A stretch of 63,993 nt of DNA, filler included, from Octopus bimaculoides (lineage: Eukaryota), in assembly GCF_001194135.2 (NCBI RefSeq). It is 6 parts of 5 records of this genome, joined end to end, with 100 filler letters (N's around TTAATTAATTAA, not from the genome) between each part and the next. Parts side by side here need not be neighbours in the genome. Positions count along the whole stretch, not along the records: positions 17,429 to 26,812 come from NC_068982.1; 5 more parts are not named here. One strand, written 5' to 3'. Positions 8,666 to 24,310 of this stretch are shown piece after piece. How positions within the stretch are numbered: position 1 is the first letter of the stretch; every line of letters begins with the position of its first letter. The position numbers and the translations under genes were made by a program. Under the pieces are notes generated by a model. That model was not told where the DNA came from, searched no databases, and worked only from the letters and a program-made list of their open reading frames with translations.

Positions 8666-9297
8666 CGCACGCGCGCGCATGCGTTTTGCAAAACTGTTTG
8701 CTGAATCAATGTGACACCGTGTTTAACAAGGCTGAGGCTTTTGAATCAGATTTACGTCCTCGTACATAACTTCACTGCATGTATTATCACTTTCTATATA
8801 AGAGAAATGATGGAACACCCTCACGGAATTATTGTGTGAATGACTGAACCTTCCAATTCTTTGGAGACTTAAAGTAATTTTCAGAGACAGTCAGTTTGAT
8901 GGTAGACTTTAAAATCACAGGTACAAGCTATCCTCTAGGATTCCATACAGTTTCCGTCTATCCATTTTCACTCAGAGGGCTTTGCTAGATACGGTCTATG
9001 TTACCTGACAATAACCTACGCAACAAAGTAGGATCGAACTATAGACCTCTGGAATGCGGAACGAAATTTGTAACCATACGGCCAAGATTGTGCCATGGTA
9101 TGATATATATATATATATATATGAATATCGCATAGCTGTAAGATGATGCAAGACTGTACCGTCATGGTCTGCTAGTTGAGAAATTATTCCGGTTGAGTAT
9201 CCACAAATGATTGTACATAAGTATATGAATGCAAGCGTGTTTACATGTGTTTGCGTTTATATACTTAACTATGTATGAAAGTGTGCGTGTGTGTGTG

Positions 9298-9328
<31 letters not shown>

Positions 9329-10319
9329 TTGTGTGCGTTCGTGCGCATGTTATGTATGCCTGGGTATGCGTATGTGAGCGGGGATGTAGTTTCGCAAGTT
9401 TATACTGTGTCCGTGACCTGGGCATGTTCGCGAGAGAGACAGTCAAGTGAGAAATGTAATGAAACCTGAATAATGGAAGGATAGCTTCACTTCACACTCG
9501 CCTTCTTCTCTGCTAACTTCTCTCGATCTTCTTTATCCGCGCTACACCTTAAATTCTTTAATTTCCGCCTAATCAGATTCTGAATTCTCTCTCTATATAT
9601 ATTTACGTCTAAAGGATCCAGTTTCAGTTTCCGTTTAGAATCATTTCATTTACGTCACTAATGCCTTCTGACAAAAACGTGAATTTCTCAACGATTCGTT
9701 CTTGATCATTTAAACTGTTTTAGAGATCGTATCTATGTGAGACACATTCTGCTGGAAAACGAGTTCGATGTCACTACTCAGTGAAATGAGCTTATTGGTG
9801 TATATTTGTTTCAAAACTAAAGTTGATACGTTCGTTCTGAATTTGTGAAGTGATCACGTAGATATGTTATTATACCACCAAGATATGTGATCCTAGTTCA
9901 AATATACTTTGGTTATTCCATCGGACTTCTCGACATCTCTAAAAATACAGCCGATCCACTGGCTTAAGAAATGATCTTACGATATTTTCTTTAAGCTGTG
10001 ACTGAAGGCTGAATCATTAAAGTGTGGATAAAATGTAGTGTGATATTTCCCCAGTTTTTTTTTCTTTGGCATTCTGAGTTGAAATCCTGTTAAGATCAAT
10101 CTAGCCCTCCATACTTCCGGGGTTGCTAAAATTATGAACCAGTGTAGGAAGATGGAATGACAGAATTTTTAGAGGATATAGGGCTCGCCTTTCTCTTCGA
10201 CAATACATCTGACGTGGAAAGGGGGAGACTTGAATGCATAAGTAACTGTTAGCCTAGCTTATCTGAGCTTATGCTCTAACGAGGAACTTTCTCTAAAGAA
10301 GAACTTTCCAGGTGTTGCA

Positions 10320-17428: not shown

Positions 17429-17860
17429 ATTAGTATAATTATACCTAAAATATCCAACAATTTAAGGAGATAGACAAATAACATGGTGTCTTAACTTCAG
17501 CATACTAAATTATCAAGAAGACTCTGCCTGTCACTGATTTTATATTTTTTATGGGGTCAGTTTTAATTTATAGACTAGTTTATGAAATCCTTGTATATCG
17601 AAGGCTGAGAGAATAAAGGGCAGTATCTGTTAGGGGTTGGGCTGTGGGAGCAGAGAGAAATCATAGTTGGTATAGTCTATACCAACTGTAGGATTTCATA
17701 AACTAGTCTATAAATTAAAACTGACCCCATAAAAACAAATAAAATCAGTGACAGACAGAATCTTCTTGATAATTTAGTAACTTCTATGCTGAAGTGAAGA
17801 CAGCATGTTCTTTGTCTATCTCCTTTACTTCTTGGAGATTTTAGGTATAATTATACTAAT
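17429..17860. mobile_element. Fold-back/MITE-like element with ~170-bp imperfect inverted arms
   Basis: Left arm attagtataattatacctaaaa...tttatgaaatcct pairs with right arm aggatttcataaa...ttttaggtataattatactaat; left end abuts a gap. Confidence 0.85.
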
Positions 17861-19194
17861 GTGTCAATCTGTTTTAATTTAATTAAATTCTCTGTCTTTG
17901 CGCAGTTGAAGATTGCTCTGCATTTTAAATTGATGTAATAATTGCATTGTTCAATTAAATGGAGTTGCATGAAACAATCGTACTGCATTACCTCTGGATA
18001 TCCCTGTTGCTTATTTTGATTTTAATCATCTTACTTTGAAATTGTATGGATAATACCGTACTAAATTCTAGTGCCTCAACTTAAGTACCATATTCATTTG
18101 AATCTATGTGTTTGTGTGTGTGTGTGTGTGTGTGTATGTGTGTGTGTGTGTGTGTGTGTGTATGAGAGAGAGAGAATAAAACGGAATTCACGAGATCGTT
18201 TGGACCCATCATGCACCGGTATCTTGTGGGTGAGATGCTGTAGCAATAGACGTGGTGCATCGTGTGTGCTTCTGTGTCTCTTCGGGTGACATTTCAAAAA
18301 GTATCGTTTTTTATTGGCCGTTCCGCTTATTTCTTCAGCAACCCGTTTTACTAATTCTAGCGTAGTACGCGTCTCCATAAGGAACTAAGATGTATATGTA
18401 TGTGCGTTTGTATGGTTGTGTGCATAAAGACCACACATTGCATCATCAATGGCTTTGCTCGTATACGAGAAAGCAGCTACTATATGTACGCTATCTAAAT
18501 TATTTATGACCGATATATGTTTCGATAAATGCATTAAAATAAATCGGAGAGGATGAATTATGTGGAACAATGCATCAATCTCGCCAGCGAGGATATAAAC
18601 AGTGTTCATCAACAAATCATTTTAACAGATCTAAGAAACTACAATATATATGCATATATATATATATATATATATACATATATATATACACTTGCACACA
18701 CACACTACACACATATATATATATATATATACACACATACACATATATACAAACACACGTGCATACATATACACACACATATATACATTCATATATACAT
18801 ACATATACACACACATATAGATATGGGGGAAAAGTTGGATAGGAAACGCTAGTAATTTTTAAAATATCGTTACGAAATTTGACATGATAGGAGGAGAGGA
18901 GGAGAGAAGGAAAAGAGGAAAAGACAAAGAGAATTAAGGAGAACTGGAGGTATAAACAAATAGAGAGTAGTTCTAATCATGTTCATCTTTTAATAATATA
19001 ATTTTAGTTTCAAGAGAACTTAAAAAAAAAACTTTAAAAAAGAACTTACTAGATCTACAAACCAAACTGCAAAATTATATTGTTAAAAAATTGGATTACA
19101 ACTACCAGTGAAGTCATTCTTTTCCTTTTTCAAATTTACCTAACTGCACCAAGGATTTCACACATATATATAATCCTTTTTTCTTTTATTCTTT

Positions 19195-19345
19195 TATTTG
19201 TTTCAGTGATTTGAGTTCGGCCATGCTGGAGTCCTGCGTTTAGTCGAACAAATCGACCCAAGGACTTATTCTTTGTATGCCTAGTACTTATTTCATCGTT
19301 CTTTTTTCCCAACATCAGTTGTCAAGCAATAGGGGGAACAAACAC
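19195..19345 (-). mobile_element. SINE family B 3' tail fragment
   Basis: tgtttcagtgatttg..ggccatgctggag..tttagtcgaacaaatcgacc; also seen at 26600-26790 and 55328-55427. Confidence 0.8.
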
Positions 19346-20634
19346 TGACACACAGACATATGCGTTTATATACATATACATAGATACACATATACATATA
19401 TATTCATATATATATATATATATATATATANNNNNNNNNNNNNNNNNNNNNNNNNNNNNNNNNNNNNNNNNNNNNNNNNNNNNNNNNNNNNNNNNNNNNN
19501 NNNNNNNNNNNNNNNNNNNNNNNNNNNNNNNNNNNNNNNNNNNNNNNNNNNNNNNNNNNNNNNNNNNNNNNNNNNNNNNNNNNNNNNNNNNNNNNNNNNN
19601 NNNNNNNNNNNNNNNNNNNNNNNNNNNNNNNNNNNNNNNNNNNNNNNNNNNNNNNNNNNNNNNNNNNNNNNNNNNNNNNNNNNNNNNNNNNNNNNNNNNN
19701 NNNNNNNNNNNNNNNNNNNNNNNNNNNNNNNNNNNNNNNNNNTGTAACGCATGAAAATAAACAATTAAAACCAGCGAAGTTCTTCAAATGTTCTAGAGGT
19801 ACGTGTATAATTATTTAAGATGTCAAAAAGTTGACCCATATGACACATGCATAAGGAAAGTAATTTTTTTATTTATAAATTTAGGATTAAAATAAATAAA
19901 TAGCAAGATAAAAGGATGAATGAAGCAAAAGATACTGAAGCAAAATAAAATAGATATGATGGCAGGTATTTAATTTATAGGTAGATTATTAGGCTAAGTG
20001 AAATAGATGCTTAAAAACAAATTTGATTTGATATTAGTAATACTAGACGGTAGGAAGAGCTGTGGAGTGCAGATTAACCAAAGACACCGACTACCAGACC
20101 AGGCAAAAGGCTGTAATGGGTTGCAGCTTATCAGTAGCGCTCAAGAGCAACCTGACAGATATATATATATATATATATATAATAGAAATATGTTCCAAAA
20201 AGAAAATAGAAACTACACGTGGAAAAGATATGGGGAAAGTAAGAAGAAAAAAGCGAAAATGCACATTGGATATCAAAAAATAAAGGCCTTTTTTATGAAA
20301 AGTAACGAAAAATATATACAATTAGATGAACTGAGGTAGAATTAAGAGGAATAAAAGAGGAAATGTTAAAGGGATTCAAAGTCATACCGGTATCGTCAAA
20401 CGCTGTTCATGTGAGCAAGAGAGGAGGAGTGAGGGAAAGAGAGTTATAGAATAATAGGATAGAATAGTGGGAGAAGAGGAGGTAAAAGAAAAAGAGAGAG
20501 AAAAAGAGTGAAAAACGAAAGAGTACAAAGATCGTAAGAGTGCACACACACACACACACACACACACACANNNNNNNNNNNNNNNNNNNNNNNNNNNNNN
20601 NNNNNNNNNNAAAATATGTGATAATTATTCGGTA

Positions 20635-21300: not shown

Positions 21301-22099
21301 CGAAAGTGCTTACACACAAAATACACTCTACGAAAACTTGCCCACTGATCAGTGACATTCTGTTTTTTAAATAACTTTTTAAATAGTTAATAACTCCATA
21401 ACTCCTAAAAAAAATCTCTTATGTATATATATTCCATTAGATGTGTTAACCTCATGAATGGATGGCTTCATCCAAGTAAATATTTTTAGGGAATTAATTT
21501 CCTTAAAATAAGAGGTATATATATAAAAACATATAGTTTATAATCATATAAAAGATGAAAAAGAAAATGGAGATTGGGAAGTTAATAATTGTTTATTATT
21601 TACAACAAATTAATCACCTTCACTTACAGCTGTTTCAATTAACCCTCAGTAACAATTAAGTAAATATTAAATTTATATTTATTTTGACCTCTGCAGAGGG
21701 AAAAAAATATACCCTTCGATGTTTAGTCTGCTATAATGAATCCATAATCACATATAGCACATCCAAAGGTATGTTTTTCCCTCTGAAGATATTATGGTGA
21801 GGTCATACAAATATAAATTTAATATTGACTTAATATCTACTGAGTATGAATTGCAACAACTACCGGACTACTGACCGTACAGAAAGACTGCCTCGTGGAA
21901 GTGAGCACGGAGTCTATACATTAGAGGTTGAAAGCTAGCTAAACTAAAGAGGCAATAAATGACTCGCTTGCCTAGCCACCTTGGTAGTTTCATCTTAAAA
22001 GCTAAATCAATGCGAAGAAATGGGCCTCAGTATCATACAGGCGAATTGGACCGCTCCATAGTGGCAGAGAGAAATTCGAGCGACCAGAAGCTGCTAAGA

Positions 22100-23070
22100 A
22101 CTTCATGTACAAATAGGCCACCAAGGAATTGGATAACAACCTTTGCCGTATGTAGTTGGGAAAAAGAAAATCAAATGTGATGTGCTAGAGCTCTGTGAAA
22201 CATGTCGAAGGAAAGAAATAAATATGAGATGGACAGAGGGAAGTATCGTGAGAATGGAGGAACAAAATCAACAGGACTCATCGTAAGCAAAGTAAGGGCT
22301 TCGAAAATTGTTTCTTGCCAATTACCTTCATCGTGCATTTGAGTGCTAAACATTCGTCTCTCGCTTGGGTAAAGATTATGATCTATAAAATCAGAGACAA
22401 AAAGTCTCGCATAACTCAATATAAAATCAACACATCAAGGCCTTTGATGTGAAATAGTTGCAGCAAGTTATGAAAAAGAAAATTTGGAGTCAACTTGAAG
22501 AGCTCGATGTGCACTACAATTTACTGGTTCAGAAAATTAAAAGCTCCAAATAGAAAGCAAAATCTGCAAGCCTGCGGGAGCCTGGTGAAAGAACCCCGGA
22601 ACGAGACAAAGAAAATGCTATAGAAACGGAAAACGATGAAGAGGCACATGAAAGATCACTTCGAGGATTCCGCGCTCTGCAAAGCCATCAGACAATATCT
22701 AAGAAATGACTTCAAGTATTGTAGACTGAAGAAATCAATGCAGGCTGCAGAGGAAAGGAGAATTTTAAAAAGATGCAGTTGAGGGTTCACATCCTATAGG
22801 TCAGAGAGAAATGACGTCGCTTTAGAATAAAGATGGGTTCACGAAAGACAAATAGGAAATGGAGGAGGTATGCAAAGCCTTCTTCACCAAAGTGTTTAAG
22901 TCACTAGTGAAGCTCGATCCCATGCCACCACAAATGCTGGAAGAAGTGTCACCTATTCTGATTAGGGAAATTGAAAATACCCTCAAACTGATGAAAGCAG
23001 ACAAAGATCCTGGAAAAGATGGCATCACAACAAAGATGTTAAGATGCTGAGTTGAAGAGCTCTGGAAAAT
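22100..23070 (+). mobile_element. Decayed RTE-clade LINE fragment (APE remnant plus RT domain 0)
   Basis: DVLELCETCRRKE.. and GLIVSK..SKIVSC APE-like motifs; SPILIREIENTLKLMKADKDPGKDGITTKML matches the EV..AI..MK..KAPG.D.I pre-RT motif. Confidence 0.75.
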
Positions 23071-23340
23071 GTACGCTTCAATCGCCATCAGAATATAAAT
23101 CACTCCGACCAATATATTCGCTGCGGTAGTATTTTTGGTCTTAATCACATGTGGTTGAGGTGAATAAATTAAATTCACTGATTCGTAAAAAAAAAGGGTG
23201 AGAGAGAAGATATAATTCTTGTCCATACTTGTTAAATCTAATTTATTCACCTCAACCAAATGAGTTTACGACCAAAAGTAATACAGCAGTGGATATATTA
23301 GTCGGAGTTATTTGTATTTATATGTAATTAAGGATAAAAT

Positions 23341-24310
23341 CATTAGTACCCTTATTGGAATTATATTTACTTTATTATATATTTGTATTAATTGTTATCT
23401 ATATGGTTTTAGTATATGCTGGTTACTTGATAAAATTGATTTTATCCTTAATTATATATAAATATAAATTACTCCGATTAATATATTCGCTGCGATAGTA
23501 TTTTTGGTCTTAATCACATGTGGTTGAGGTGAATAAATTAGATTTAGCTCGTATATACGTGTGAATATTTGTATATATGCGTGTGGATACGTGTTGTTCA
23601 TATGGTTTTGTATAAATATTTGCATTTATGTACAATGTGGTACATTATACTGATGACAGCAAAGGGATTTTATATCTCTAAGCTAGAAATCGATCTATAA
23701 TTAACCCTTCAAAAAAAAAAGATCTTCTTTGTTCACTGTCCTCGCTTTCAACCCGTATTAATGAAGTACATGATCTAGTTTTTAGAGCCATTTGGCGTCT
23801 ATATCTAGCATGTGGTGCTATTTATTAGTACCCTTATTATAATTAAATGTATATAATTATATATTTGTATTAATTGTTACCGATATGGTTTTTATTACAT
23901 CCTGGCTACTTGATAAAGTCTTTTAAATGATTTTATTATCCTTAATTATATATAAACATAAATTGCTCCAGCTATTATACCCACCACGGTATTATTTTTG
24001 GTCGTAAACATATGTGGTTGAAGTGAATAGATTAGATGTAACTCGTGTATACGTGTGAATATGTATTCGTATGGGTATGTATAAATATTTGCATTTATGT
24101 AAAATATGGTATATTTTATATCTCGAAGCTAGAAATCGATTTATAATTAACCCTTTTAAAAACAAATCTTCTTTGTTCAGTTTCCTCGCTTTCAACCCGT
24201 GCTAATGGAGTACTTGATGTAGTTTTTAGAGCCATTTGGCGTCTATATCTTGCATGTGGTGCTATTTATTATGTGCCCTTACTATAATTATACTTATATA
24301 ATTATATATT
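23341..24310 (+). repeat. Tandem repeat, ~2.1 copies of a 445-480 bp unit, carrying a hammerhead (candidate non-LTR retrozyme)
   Basis: Anchor attagtaccctt recurs at 23342, 23824 and 24268; gaagctagaaatcgat-like HHR 3' half at 23686 and 24132. Confidence 0.85.
23644..23701 (+). ncRNA. Minimal type I hammerhead ribozyme
   Basis: AUUAUA / CUGAUGA / CAGC-aa-AGGGAU-uuuau-AUCUCU-aa-GCUA / GAAA-U-CG-AUC / UAUAAU; only defect is a C.A mismatch closing helix II. Confidence 0.75.

What the first reader, a model, noticed from the sequence alone, without database searches (positions are those of the whole stretch)
23341..24310. Candidate octopus non-LTR retrozyme: ORF-less tandem ~450-480 nt units punctuated by hammerheads
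Seen: ~2.1 tandem AT-rich units. Unit 1 has a nearly intact minimal type I HHR (23644-23701) with palindromic AUCGAU helix III. Unit 2 keeps the GCUA-GAAAUCGAUU-UAUAAU half (24128-24147) but has lost the CUGAUGA half by a ~24-nt deletion. Predicted cut sites (after 23695 and 24141) are 446 nt apart. Known: metazoan non-LTR retrozymes are non-coding tandem repeats with such HHRs that self-process to circular RNAs, are usually somewhat shorter, and are thought to use PLE enzymes. Inference: this is such a family; I do not know of a description in octopus.
Basis: partly seen in the sequence, partly recalled or inferred. Interest (0 to 1): 0.85.

Follow-up and report, generated by a model that had tools for sequence, protein, structure and literature searches.

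The report
Octopus hammerhead-ribozyme repeat, decayed tandem copy
This stretch is an old, partly broken tandem copy of a short non-coding mobile repeat of octopus genomes that carries a self-cleaving hammerhead ribozyme; such elements are known in other animals, but I found no description of one in cephalopods.

Summary
Window 23342-24313 is about 2.1 head-to-tail AT-rich units of 482 and 445 nt plus a 45-nt stub. Unit 1 carries a complete type I hammerhead (HHR) at 23644-23701. Unit 2 keeps only the 3' half.

The motif is not chance. A descriptor this loose is expected 0.002-0.004 times in the 9-kb piece.

I reached Octopus sinensis and O. bimaculoides DNA through a decayed LINE beside the repeat. 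In about 180 kb I found two more HHRs of the same unusual build, plus one 5'-truncated copy without an HHR. The shared build is a 6-bp helix I, a 29-nt helix II domain with a 3x3 internal loop, and a palindromic helix III. Across the three HHRs, 11 of 17 base pairs show compensatory double changes.

The roughly 260 nt downstream of the HHR is homologous between loci, and copies end at (TA)n or (ATT)n microsatellites. Both outside copies have the CUGANGA half, so unit 2 lost it by a 23-nt deletion.

Best reading: a decayed locus of a dispersed, ORF-less, HHR-bearing retroelement of the non-LTR retrozyme / Penelope-like pLTR kind. Self-cleavage, circular RNA and the mobilising enzyme remain untested.

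The parts
23092..23175 (+). Partial direct copy of the unit's upstream module ('B'). It is 94% identical to 23461-23544 of unit 1 and starts exactly where homology to the LINE ends (23093).
23225..23342 (-). Inverted partial copy. It spans a unit-to-unit junction: the last ~25 nt of one unit plus the first ~95 nt of the next. It is 86% complementary to 23437-23554 and abuts the start of the direct array head to head.
23342..23823 (+). Tandem unit 1 (482 nt, GC 29%), which carries the complete hammerhead.
23644..23701 (+). Type I hammerhead ribozyme: helix I 23644-49/23696-701; CUGAUGA 23650-56; 29-nt helix II domain 23657-85 (C.A at 10.1/11.1, 3 bp, AAA/UAA internal loop, 5 bp, 5-nt loop); GAAA 23686-89; palindromic helix III AUCGAU 23689-94; C17 at 23695 with the predicted cut after it.
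23795..23965 (+). Conserved 3' module of the element (blocks GCATGTGGTG, CCCTTATTATAATTAAAT, CTACTTGATAAAGTCTTTTAAATGATTTTATTATCCTTAATTATATATA). It is homologous to L032:17056-17226(-), L032:8190-8380(-) and L033:27060-27215. The same module in part is also at 23342-23470.
23824..24268 (+). Tandem unit 2 (445 nt). Its hammerhead is inactivated by a 23-nt deletion.
24107..24158 (+). Hammerhead relic of unit 2. It keeps the 3' half of helix II, GAAA, AUCGAU, U17 (cut site would be after 24141) and UAUAAU. It lacks the helix I 5' strand, CUGAUGA and the 5' half of helix II.
   Evidence: model R1, 24.8 bits, E 0.06
24269..24313 (+). Start of a third unit (about 45 nt) that runs into the microsatellite.
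24314..24390 (.). (TA)n / (TATATATTTA)n microsatellite abutting the 3' end of the array. Related copies in O. sinensis likewise end at (TA)n or (ATT)n.

Best explanation
What it is. The locus is an old, decayed cluster of copies of a short, non-coding, very AT-rich retroelement family of octopus genomes. The cluster holds 2.1 tandem units plus one inverted and one direct fragment. Each element carries a type I hammerhead ribozyme and is of the non-LTR retrozyme / Penelope-like-element (PLE) pLTR kind.

Shown here:
- The hammerhead is a real, conserved RNA structure shared with copies on other octopus chromosomes.
- The family is dispersed.
- The HHR plus about 260 nt downstream is the conserved module.
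- Copies can be 5'-truncated and end at AT-rich microsatellites.
- Unit 2 lost its catalytic half by deletion.

Inferred from published work on related elements (Cervera & de la Pena 2014, 2020; Craig et al. 2021; Li et al. 2026). Multimeric transcripts of intact arrays would self-cleave after C/U/A17. In the window's HHR and in L033's, helix III is a loop-less 6-nt segment: a perfect palindrome in the window, one mismatch short of one in L033. It can form only between two ribozyme copies, so cleavage would go through a 'double hammerhead'. Unit-length RNAs would then be circularised by a host RNA ligase and copied by a PLE-type reverse transcriptase into tandem or inverted insertions at (TA)n sites.

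This particular locus is most likely dead. It has only one catalytic half. In the dimer geometry that half would cut unit 2's site (after 24141) and not its own, so no unit-length RNA can be released.
For: 1. All core nucleotides are in place (CUGAUGA, GAAA, A15.1-U16.1, C17), with a 6-bp helix I and a 4-position helix IIa, the canonical metazoan type I geometry (PMC4209133).
2. Chance expectation is 0.0015-0.0036 per piece. The same descriptor gives 4 hits in 179 kb of octopus DNA against 0.053 in shuffles.
3. L033:26892-26949 and L032:8522-8459(-) share the unusual 29-nt helix II domain and a palindromic or near-palindromic helix III. On the three-way alignment, 96% of cells pair and 11 of 17 pairs have compensatory double changes, against 0-2 in slid controls. 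Six of these pairs lie in the inner helix II stem and helix III, which my descriptor did not require.
4. Downstream flank homology: window against L032:17040-17260rc has z=15.5, against L033 z=6.2, and against L032:8190-8447rc z=4.0. The two L032 copies give z=34 against each other. The distance from the HHR to the conserved block is similar in all copies (146-170 nt).
5. The units have no ORF longer than 67 aa, the adjacent region gave no meaningful Pfam hit and no tRNA was found. GC is 29%.
6. The layout of tandem units, a head-to-head inverted 5'-truncated copy and a (TA)n flank matches the 'complex tandem/inverted insertions' and microsatellite bias described for PLE-type integration (PMC8557442).
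7. The + strand unit RNAs fold more stably than shuffles (z -2.6 to -4.1).
Against: - There are only three HHR copies. The two outside copies were found with a descriptor that imposes the core, helix I and the outer helix II, so those parts are ascertained.
- The otherwise highly conserved G10.1-C11.1 pair is present in only one of three copies (C.A in the window, A.C in L032).
- No Rfam hammerhead model matches.
- The HHR fold is not the predicted minimum-energy fold of the window's motif: -4.6 against -11.5 kcal/mol for a fold that pairs UGAU of the core with AUCG.
- Sequence upstream of the HHR is not detectably conserved between loci.
- Within this family, only the window shows a tandem arrangement.
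- The B copies fall into two sequence types: (23092 copy, unit 1) and (inverted copy, unit 2). This fits later local rearrangement or conversion better than one clean insertion event.
- No PLE reverse transcriptase or GIY-YIG gene was seen near any copy.
- No expression or cleavage data exist.
Confidence: 0.78

Rival explanations
1. The conserved HHR plus ~260-nt block is the 3' end (pseudo-LTR / 3' UTR) of a longer, possibly autonomous Penelope-like element. The copies seen are then 5'-truncated insertions, and the window's array is a partial-tandem pLTR structure rather than a free-standing ~450-nt retrozyme.
For: - Upstream sequences differ completely between the window, L033 and L032.
- L032:8530-8900(-) shows no microsatellite boundary for at least 380 nt upstream of its HHR.
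- A 5'-truncated copy exists.
- A tandem array with an inverted 5'-truncated copy is the classic PLE layout.
- Li et al. 2026 derive retrozymes from pLTRs.
Against: - The window's repeat period is only 445-482 nt, with a head-to-tail junction present in three copies. At least this subfamily is therefore a short element.
- No RT or GIY-YIG reading frame lies next to any copy. The six-frame view of L032 upstream is junk and the only gene nearby is a LINE.
- L033's copy sits in a ~530-nt interval bounded by microsatellites.
Confidence: 0.12
2. It is a SINE-like non-autonomous element, with a microsatellite 3' tail, that is mobilised by a LINE. The hammerhead is a passenger, and no circular RNA or PLE is involved.
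For: - Copies end in (TA)n or (ATT)n, like the simple-repeat tails of some LINE/SINE partners.
- There is a 5'-truncated copy with a possible ~10-nt target duplication, TA(A)GCAAAA(A)C.
- LINEs are abundant around all loci.
Against: - No tRNA, 5S or 7SL-like head was found.
- Head-to-tail tandem plus inverted copies are not what LINE-driven insertion usually leaves.
- Strong structural conservation of the HHR, set against weak primary-sequence conservation, argues that the ribozyme matters to propagation.
Confidence: 0.07
3. A chance hammerhead-like string lies inside a local segmental duplication of AT-rich DNA.
For: - Only one of the two units has the motif.
- There is no Rfam hit.
- 10.1/11.1 is mismatched.
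- At about 0.4 per Mb, such loose matches would number several hundred to about a thousand by chance in a genome of 2-3 Gb.
Against: - Two further loci on other chromosomes carry the same architecture, with compensatory changes and homologous flanks.
- The descriptor is enriched about 75-fold in the sampled octopus DNA.
Confidence: 0.03

Closest known systems
Non-LTR retrozymes of invertebrates, e.g. Mytilus galloprovincialis (350-390-bp repeats) and Acropora millepora (220-240 bp) (Cervera & de la Pena 2020, PMC7229834)
   Same: [quoted passage not shown] Helix I is 6 bp and helix II is 4 positions before the loop region. The family is dispersed, with monomers and multimers.
   Different: - Units are longer (445-482 nt here, against a reported range of about 150-450 bp for repeats and 170-400 nt for the RNAs).
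- Loop 2 is replaced by a 3x3 internal loop plus a 5-bp hairpin, giving a 29-nt domain.
- Helix III has no loop, as in amphibian or minimal HHRs.
- GC is only 29%.
- Only one complete HHR survives at this locus.
- No RNA data exist.
Minimal HHRs in the pseudo-LTRs of Penelope-like elements (Cervera & de la Pena 2014, PMC4209133; Craig et al. 2021, PMC8557442)
   Same: Type I HHR with a long helix II and a palindromic 15.2-16.2 segment that implies action as a dimer. High sequence variability with compensatory changes. Tandem and inverted insertion structures, with a bias for (TA)n.
   Different: - Helix I is a full 6 bp (4-5 bp in min-HHRs).
[quoted passage not shown]
- G10.1-C11.1 is present in only 1 of 3 copies.
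- No PLE ORF is attached in any copy seen.
Amphibian satellite 2 / axolotl retrozymes (HHR_Amex1/2; PMC7229834)
   Same: A very weak helix III with a palindromic sequence, efficient only as a double hammerhead. One axolotl family also tolerates a mismatch (U.U) at the base of helix II.
   Different: A different phylum. Units are 330-350 nt, with canonical loop 1-loop 2 contacts. There is no sequence similarity.
Schistosoma Sm-alpha / W-element HHR repeats
   Same: A dispersed and tandem non-autonomous repeat with a type I HHR in a lophotrochozoan (from my own knowledge and PMC4209133).
   Different: Canonical short helix II and loop contacts. SINE-like features are reported. It is unrelated in sequence.

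Membership tests
Hammerhead ribozyme, type I | Conserved core C3 U4 G5 A6 N7 G8 A9 / G12 A13 A14 / A15.1-U16.1 / H17, in the order helix I - core - helix II - GAAA - helix III - site - helix I | tested here: met
   Window 23644-23701 read directly. The same holds in L033 and L032.
Hammerhead ribozyme, type I | Helices I, II and III supported by covariation | tested here: met
   11 of 17 pairs carry compensatory changes and 96% of cells pair, against 0-2 pairs in slid controls. This rests on only 3 sequences, and helix I and the outer helix II were partly imposed by the descriptor.
Hammerhead ribozyme, type I | G10.1-C11.1 closing pair of helix II (highly conserved in natural HHRs) | tested here: inconclusive
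   C.A in the window, A.C in L032 and G-C in L033. The mismatched copies may be decayed or may be tolerated variants.
Hammerhead ribozyme, type I | Match to curated Rfam hammerhead models | tested here: not met
   No hit at E<=10. There is also none for the canonical-core relative, probably because of the 21-nt insertion in place of loop 2 and the loop-less helix III.
Hammerhead ribozyme, type I | Self-cleavage after position 17 | not testable with these tools
   Needs in vitro transcription of monomer and dimer constructs.
Non-LTR retrozyme (Cervera & de la Pena 2020) | Tandem repeats of about 150-450 bp without LTR, PBS, PPT or ORF, and with low GC | tested here: met
   Units are 482 and 445 nt, at or just above the upper limit. 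GC is 29% and no ORF exceeds 67 aa. LTR, PBS and PPT were not searched for specifically; none is apparent.
Non-LTR retrozyme (Cervera & de la Pena 2020) | A type I HHR in every unit; at least two consecutive complete HHRs for an active element (working rule of Li et al. 2026) | tested here: not met
   Only unit 1 is complete. Unit 2 has a 23-nt deletion. The locus is therefore a relic and not an active retrozyme.
Non-LTR retrozyme (Cervera & de la Pena 2020) | Multi-copy, dispersed family in the genome | tested here: met
   Three related copies lie in about 180 kb of O. sinensis and O. bimaculoides DNA, on two chromosomes. The true copy number is unknown and the sampling was near LINEs.
Non-LTR retrozyme (Cervera & de la Pena 2020) | Expressed as unit-length linear and circular RNAs | not testable with these tools
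   No transcriptome access.
PLE pseudo-LTR / PLE-dependent element | Physical or sequence link to a PLE (RT plus GIY-YIG ORF) that shares the HHR module | not tested
   No PLE ORF lay within the loci fetched. A whole-genome search was not possible.
PLE pseudo-LTR / PLE-dependent element | Complex tandem/inverted insertion structure and a microsatellite target | tested here: met
   Direct array, head-to-head inverted fragment and (TA)n flank. Other copies end at (TA)n or (ATT)n.

The most novel reading that the evidence does not exclude
Octopus genomes may hold a large, undescribed family of hammerhead elements, on the order of 10^4 copies. That figure is a crude extrapolation from 2-3 copies in about 180 kb. 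The ribozyme would be a distinct structural variant: loop 2 replaced by a conserved AAR/UAA internal loop plus an extra hairpin, a loop-less palindromic helix III, and tolerance of an A.C pair at 10.1/11.1. Intact arrays would produce unusually large (~450-530 nt) circular RNAs in cephalopod tissues.
Probability: 0.3. Interest if true: 0.62.

Novelty: new member of a known kind. Interest (0 to 1): 0.5.

Why it matters
Hammerhead-bearing retrozymes and PLE ribozymes are known from cnidarians, bivalves, flatworms, arthropods, fishes and amphibians. I found no paper in the held library that reports them in cephalopods.

If the family is as common as the small sample suggests, octopus tissues may contain abundant small circular RNAs of ribozyme origin. 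That matters for cephalopod transcriptomics and for annotating the repeat-rich octopus genomes.

The helix II variant gives ribozyme biochemists natural sequences for testing two things: how loop 2 can be replaced, and whether an A.C pair at 10.1/11.1 is tolerated. It also exposes a blind spot, since the current Rfam models miss this architecture entirely.

Tried and rejected
- Rfam scans of the piece, of a 201-nt slice and of the related loci gave no ribozyme family. Only microsatellite-driven miRNA look-alikes appeared.
- Exact 18-mer scans of JGI metagenomes and GTDB genomes gave only chance matches of 18-27 nt. A viral-contig scan gave nothing.
- I tried a protein 'back door', translating junk ORFs of the repeat and the LINE fragment for the search for homologous proteins. 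It gave nothing, because the word index is too insensitive for decayed sequence.
- Exact look-ups of four window ORFs found none on record.
- What worked was a full HMMER search with the LINE ORF. Its octopus hits could then be used to fetch genomic DNA.
- L030 (GCA_965140255.1) and L031 (an ENA contig) share no repeats with the window and were excluded from the counts.
- A rod-like circular RNA fold is not evident. The units fold into many local AU hairpins, and units 1 and 2 fold differently.
- A continuation of the LINE downstream of the array was not found, so no clean target-site duplication could be defined for the window's cluster.
- Pfam on the LINE-flank frames gave nothing meaningful.
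- Model R1 found no further copies in about 200 kb beyond its training sequences and the unit 2 relic.

Full report
**1. The observation**

Repeat finding, alignment and self-BLAST give unit 1 at 23342-23823 (482 nt), unit 2 at 23824-24268 (445 nt) and a 45-nt start of a third unit. That stub runs into a (TA)n-rich microsatellite. Ungapped blocks shared by the units are 80-91% identical, and three indels of 11, 25 and 23 nt separate them. Tandem Repeats Finder did not report the array.

The proposed hammerhead reads as follows:
- helix I: AUUAUA (23644-49) with UAUAAU (23696-701)
- CUGAUGA: 23650-56
- helix II domain: 29 nt, 23657-85
- GAAA: 23686-89
- helix III: AUCGAU, 23689-94
- C17 at 23695

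Unit 2 has GCUAGAAAUCGAUUUAUAAU at 24128-47. The whole 5' half (helix I strand, CUGAUGA, 5' strands of helix II) lies in a 23-nt segment that unit 2 lacks. The two predicted cut sites are 446 nt apart.

**2. Is it more than chance?**

It requires CUGANGA, helix II of at least 3 bp with one closing mismatch allowed, GAAA, 0-14 nt, U-H, and helix I of at least 5 bp. It hits only this site in the 9.4-kb piece. Dinucleotide shuffles of the piece give 0.0015 hits per shuffle. A 20-Mb Markov simulation gives 0.0036 per 9 kb.

That rate is low for one piece. It would still give several hundred to about a thousand chance hits in a genome of 2-3 Gb, so the motif alone was not decisive. Rfam found no hammerhead at E<=10, either on the piece or on a 201-nt slice.

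**3. Getting related sequences**

None of the searchable DNA collections holds cephalopod genomes. Exact-word scans gave only chance hits. Word-indexed protein searches with junk ORFs also failed.

Immediately upstream of the repeat lies a decayed LINE ORF2 fragment (about 22017-23093, + strand), with the motif KDPGKDGITTKML just before the RT domain. A full HMMER search with its 63-aa ORF gave as best hits uncharacterised proteins of Octopus bimaculoides (XP_014775241) and O. sinensis. The longer hits carry Exo_endo_phos and RVT_1.

These ids could be used to fetch genomic DNA. I obtained L029 (O. bimaculoides) and L032-L036 (O. sinensis GCA_006345805.1), about 180 kb in all. The window shares several interspersed repeats with these loci at 72-93% identity. 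The octopus origin is therefore confirmed.

**4. The family**

The same descriptor finds 4 sites in the 179 kb, against 0.053 in shuffles. Two of them have the window's architecture.
- L033:26892-26949(+): AUUAUA-CUGAAGA-[29 nt]-GAAA-CGCAU-U-UAUAAU. Its helix I is identical to the window's.
- L032:8522-8459(-): GUUCUA-CUGAUGA-[29 nt]-GAAA-UCACAGGUGAU-A-UAGAAC.

In all three, the 29-nt domain has the same parts:
- the 10.1/11.1 position
- 3 bp
- a 3x3 internal loop, AAA, AAG or AGA opposite an invariant UAA
- 5 bp
- a 5-nt loop

The alignment is gap-free apart from helix III. On it, 96% of cells pair and 11 of 17 pairs show compensatory double changes. Sliding the partners by 1-3 columns gives 0-2. 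All five pairs of the inner helix II stem co-vary, as does the central pair of helix III (C-G against G-C). My descriptor did not require these pairs, so this evidence is independent of how the copies were found.

The geometry is that described for canonical metazoan type I hammerheads: a 6-bp helix I, four positions in helix II before the loop region, and a very short palindromic helix III (PMC4209133). The difference is that loop 2 is replaced by an internal loop and an extra hairpin.

The 10.1/11.1 pair is G-C only in L033. It is C.A in the window and A.C in L032.

Rfam also fails on the canonical-core L033 copy. Its silence on the window is therefore a limit of the models and not evidence against the ribozyme.

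**5. Flanks**

BLAST links window 23823-23963 to L032:17198-17056(-) (72%, E 4e-11). That L032 copy is 74% identical to the region downstream of the L032:8516 hammerhead (E 2e-28).

Local-alignment scores against dinucleotide shuffles for the ~260 nt downstream of the HHR:

| Pair | z |
|---|---|
| window vs L032:17040-17260rc | 15.5 |
| window vs L033 | 6.2 |
| window vs L032:8190-8447rc | 4.0 |
| the two L032 copies | 34 |

The distance from C3 of the HHR to the conserved block GC(A/G)TG(T/A)GG is 146-170 nt in all three HHR-bearing copies. Upstream of the HHR no similarity is detectable between loci.

L032:17040-17260 is a 5'-truncated copy without the HHR. It has (TA)n on both sides and a possible target duplication, TA(A)GCAAAA(A)C. 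The 3' ends of the copies run into (TA)n (both L032 copies, and the window's array) or (ATT)n (L033).

Covariance model R1 scores the relic at 24.8 bits with that half missing.

**6. Anatomy of the window's cluster**

With the family's 3' end known (...GATTTTATCCTTAATTATATATA), the head-to-tail junction lies near 23446-23475 in unit 1 and near 23940-23968 in unit 2.

Upstream of the array there are two fragments:
- An inverted fragment (23225-23342). It spans such a junction and meets the array head to head.
- A direct 84-nt fragment (23092-23175). It begins exactly where LINE homology stops.

This is the 'complex tandem/inverted insertion' pattern, with an inverted 5'-truncated copy and a (TA)n bias, reported for PLE-type integration.

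The copies fall into two sequence types: (23092 fragment, unit 1) and (inverted fragment, unit 2). The present arrangement therefore also reflects later local duplication or gene conversion, or a heterogeneous multimeric template.

**7. How it most likely works**

*Shown.* A conserved hammerhead fold, a dispersed non-coding family, 5' truncation, and microsatellite-associated 3' ends.

*Inferred from the literature on retrozymes and PLE ribozymes (PMC7229834, PMC4209133, 10.64898/2026.07.22.740005).* Arrays would be transcribed, cleaved after position 17, circularised by a host ligase, and reverse-transcribed into new tandem copies by a PLE enzyme.

In the window and in L033, helix III is a loop-less 6-nt segment: AUCGAU, a perfect palindrome, and ACGCAU, one mismatch short of one. 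It cannot close on itself, so two ribozyme copies must pair as a double hammerhead. L032's AUCACAGGUGAU could form a 4-bp hairpin on its own, and its predicted homodimer is the domain-swapped double hammerhead.

Energetically these AU-rich hammerheads are weak (-3 to -6 kcal/mol). In the window's copy an alternative pairing of UGAU with AUCG is favoured (-11.5 kcal/mol).

At this locus only unit 1 has a catalytic half. In the dimer geometry that half would act on unit 2's site. Unit 1's own site would have no partner, so no unit-length RNA could be released. Together with the 9-20% mismatch between the units, this marks the locus as a relic.

**8. Comparison and novelty**

The element works like, and by sequence criteria belongs with, the non-LTR retrozymes and PLE-pLTR hammerhead repeats. 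It differs in four ways:
- unit length, at or above the top of the reported range
- the extended helix II
- the non-canonical 10.1/11.1 in two of three copies
- very low GC

The locus fails the working rule of at least two consecutive complete HHRs. I therefore file it as a decayed member of a family of that kind.

Whether the family is a free-standing retrozyme or the 3' module of longer PLEs is open, since the upstream sequence is not conserved. Searches of the held literature found no report of hammerheads or retrozymes in octopus or other cephalopods. Subscription journals and Repbase were not searchable.

**9. Verdict**

This is a new member of a known kind, of moderate interest.

Noticed in passing
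window 22017-23093 (+): Decayed LINE ORF2 fragment, covering the linker between the endonuclease and RT domains, with the motif KDPGKDGITTKML. Its best relatives are O. bimaculoides XP_014775241 and O. sinensis LINE-like proteins carrying Exo_endo_phos and RVT_1. Homology stops at 23093, exactly where the repeat cluster begins, and does not resume downstream.
   Followed up: yes
window 19164-19310 and 26584-26812; also 25753-25934 and 17856-18019: Short interspersed repeats shared with O. bimaculoides and O. sinensis loci at 74-93% identity, for example with L029:771-1004, L032:5205-5436 and L032:3357-3554. They are probably octopus SINEs and were not classified.
   Followed up: partly
L033:8813-8922 and 9224-9333 (O. 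sinensis CM016866.1): A second, different hammerhead family in a partial tandem with 411-nt spacing. The first copy is GGGGUG-CUGAUGA-AAGAUCAAUAAUUCUU-GAAA-UAUACAUAU-A-CAUUC. The second is decayed (UUGAUGA...GGAA). It is preceded by (TAC)n(TAA)n. This suggests octopus has several retrozyme-like families.
   Followed up: partly
L032:18080-18260: A long, near-perfect palindrome whose right arm contains CUGAUGA...GAAA and passes the loose hammerhead descriptor. It could be a foldback element, a pair of opposite-strand minimal HHRs, or chance.
   Followed up: no
L032:17027-16990 (-): A weak hammerhead-like string (CUGU-CUGAUGA-ACGGCAACGA-GAAA-CUCAGAGU-A-ACAG) lies in the DNA flanking the 5'-truncated copy, just past its (TA)n. 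It passes only the most relaxed descriptor.
   Followed up: no
L033:61563-61613 (-): Model R1 gives a weak hit (15 bits, E 7) containing AAAUCGAUCUAU, the same string as the window's helix III and cut site. It may be a relic with helix II deleted.
   Followed up: no
window 25248-25453, 18644-18830, 19345-19434, 24465-24570: Rfam 'mir-297/mir-466/mir-3149/mir-5014' hits, all below gathering scores, fall on (TATG)n, (CA)n and (TA)n microsatellites. They are low-complexity artefacts.
   Followed up: yes
window about 19430-19760 and about 20570-20612: Runs of N (assembly gaps) inside the piece.
   Followed up: no
window 23559-23625: Unit 1 has a 25-nt insertion relative to unit 2. Together with a neighbouring stretch shared with unit 2, it forms a 17-bp AU-rich hairpin (GUGUGAAUAUUUGUAUA / UGUAUAAAUAUUUGCAU). 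This accounts for much of unit 1's low folding energy.
   Followed up: partly
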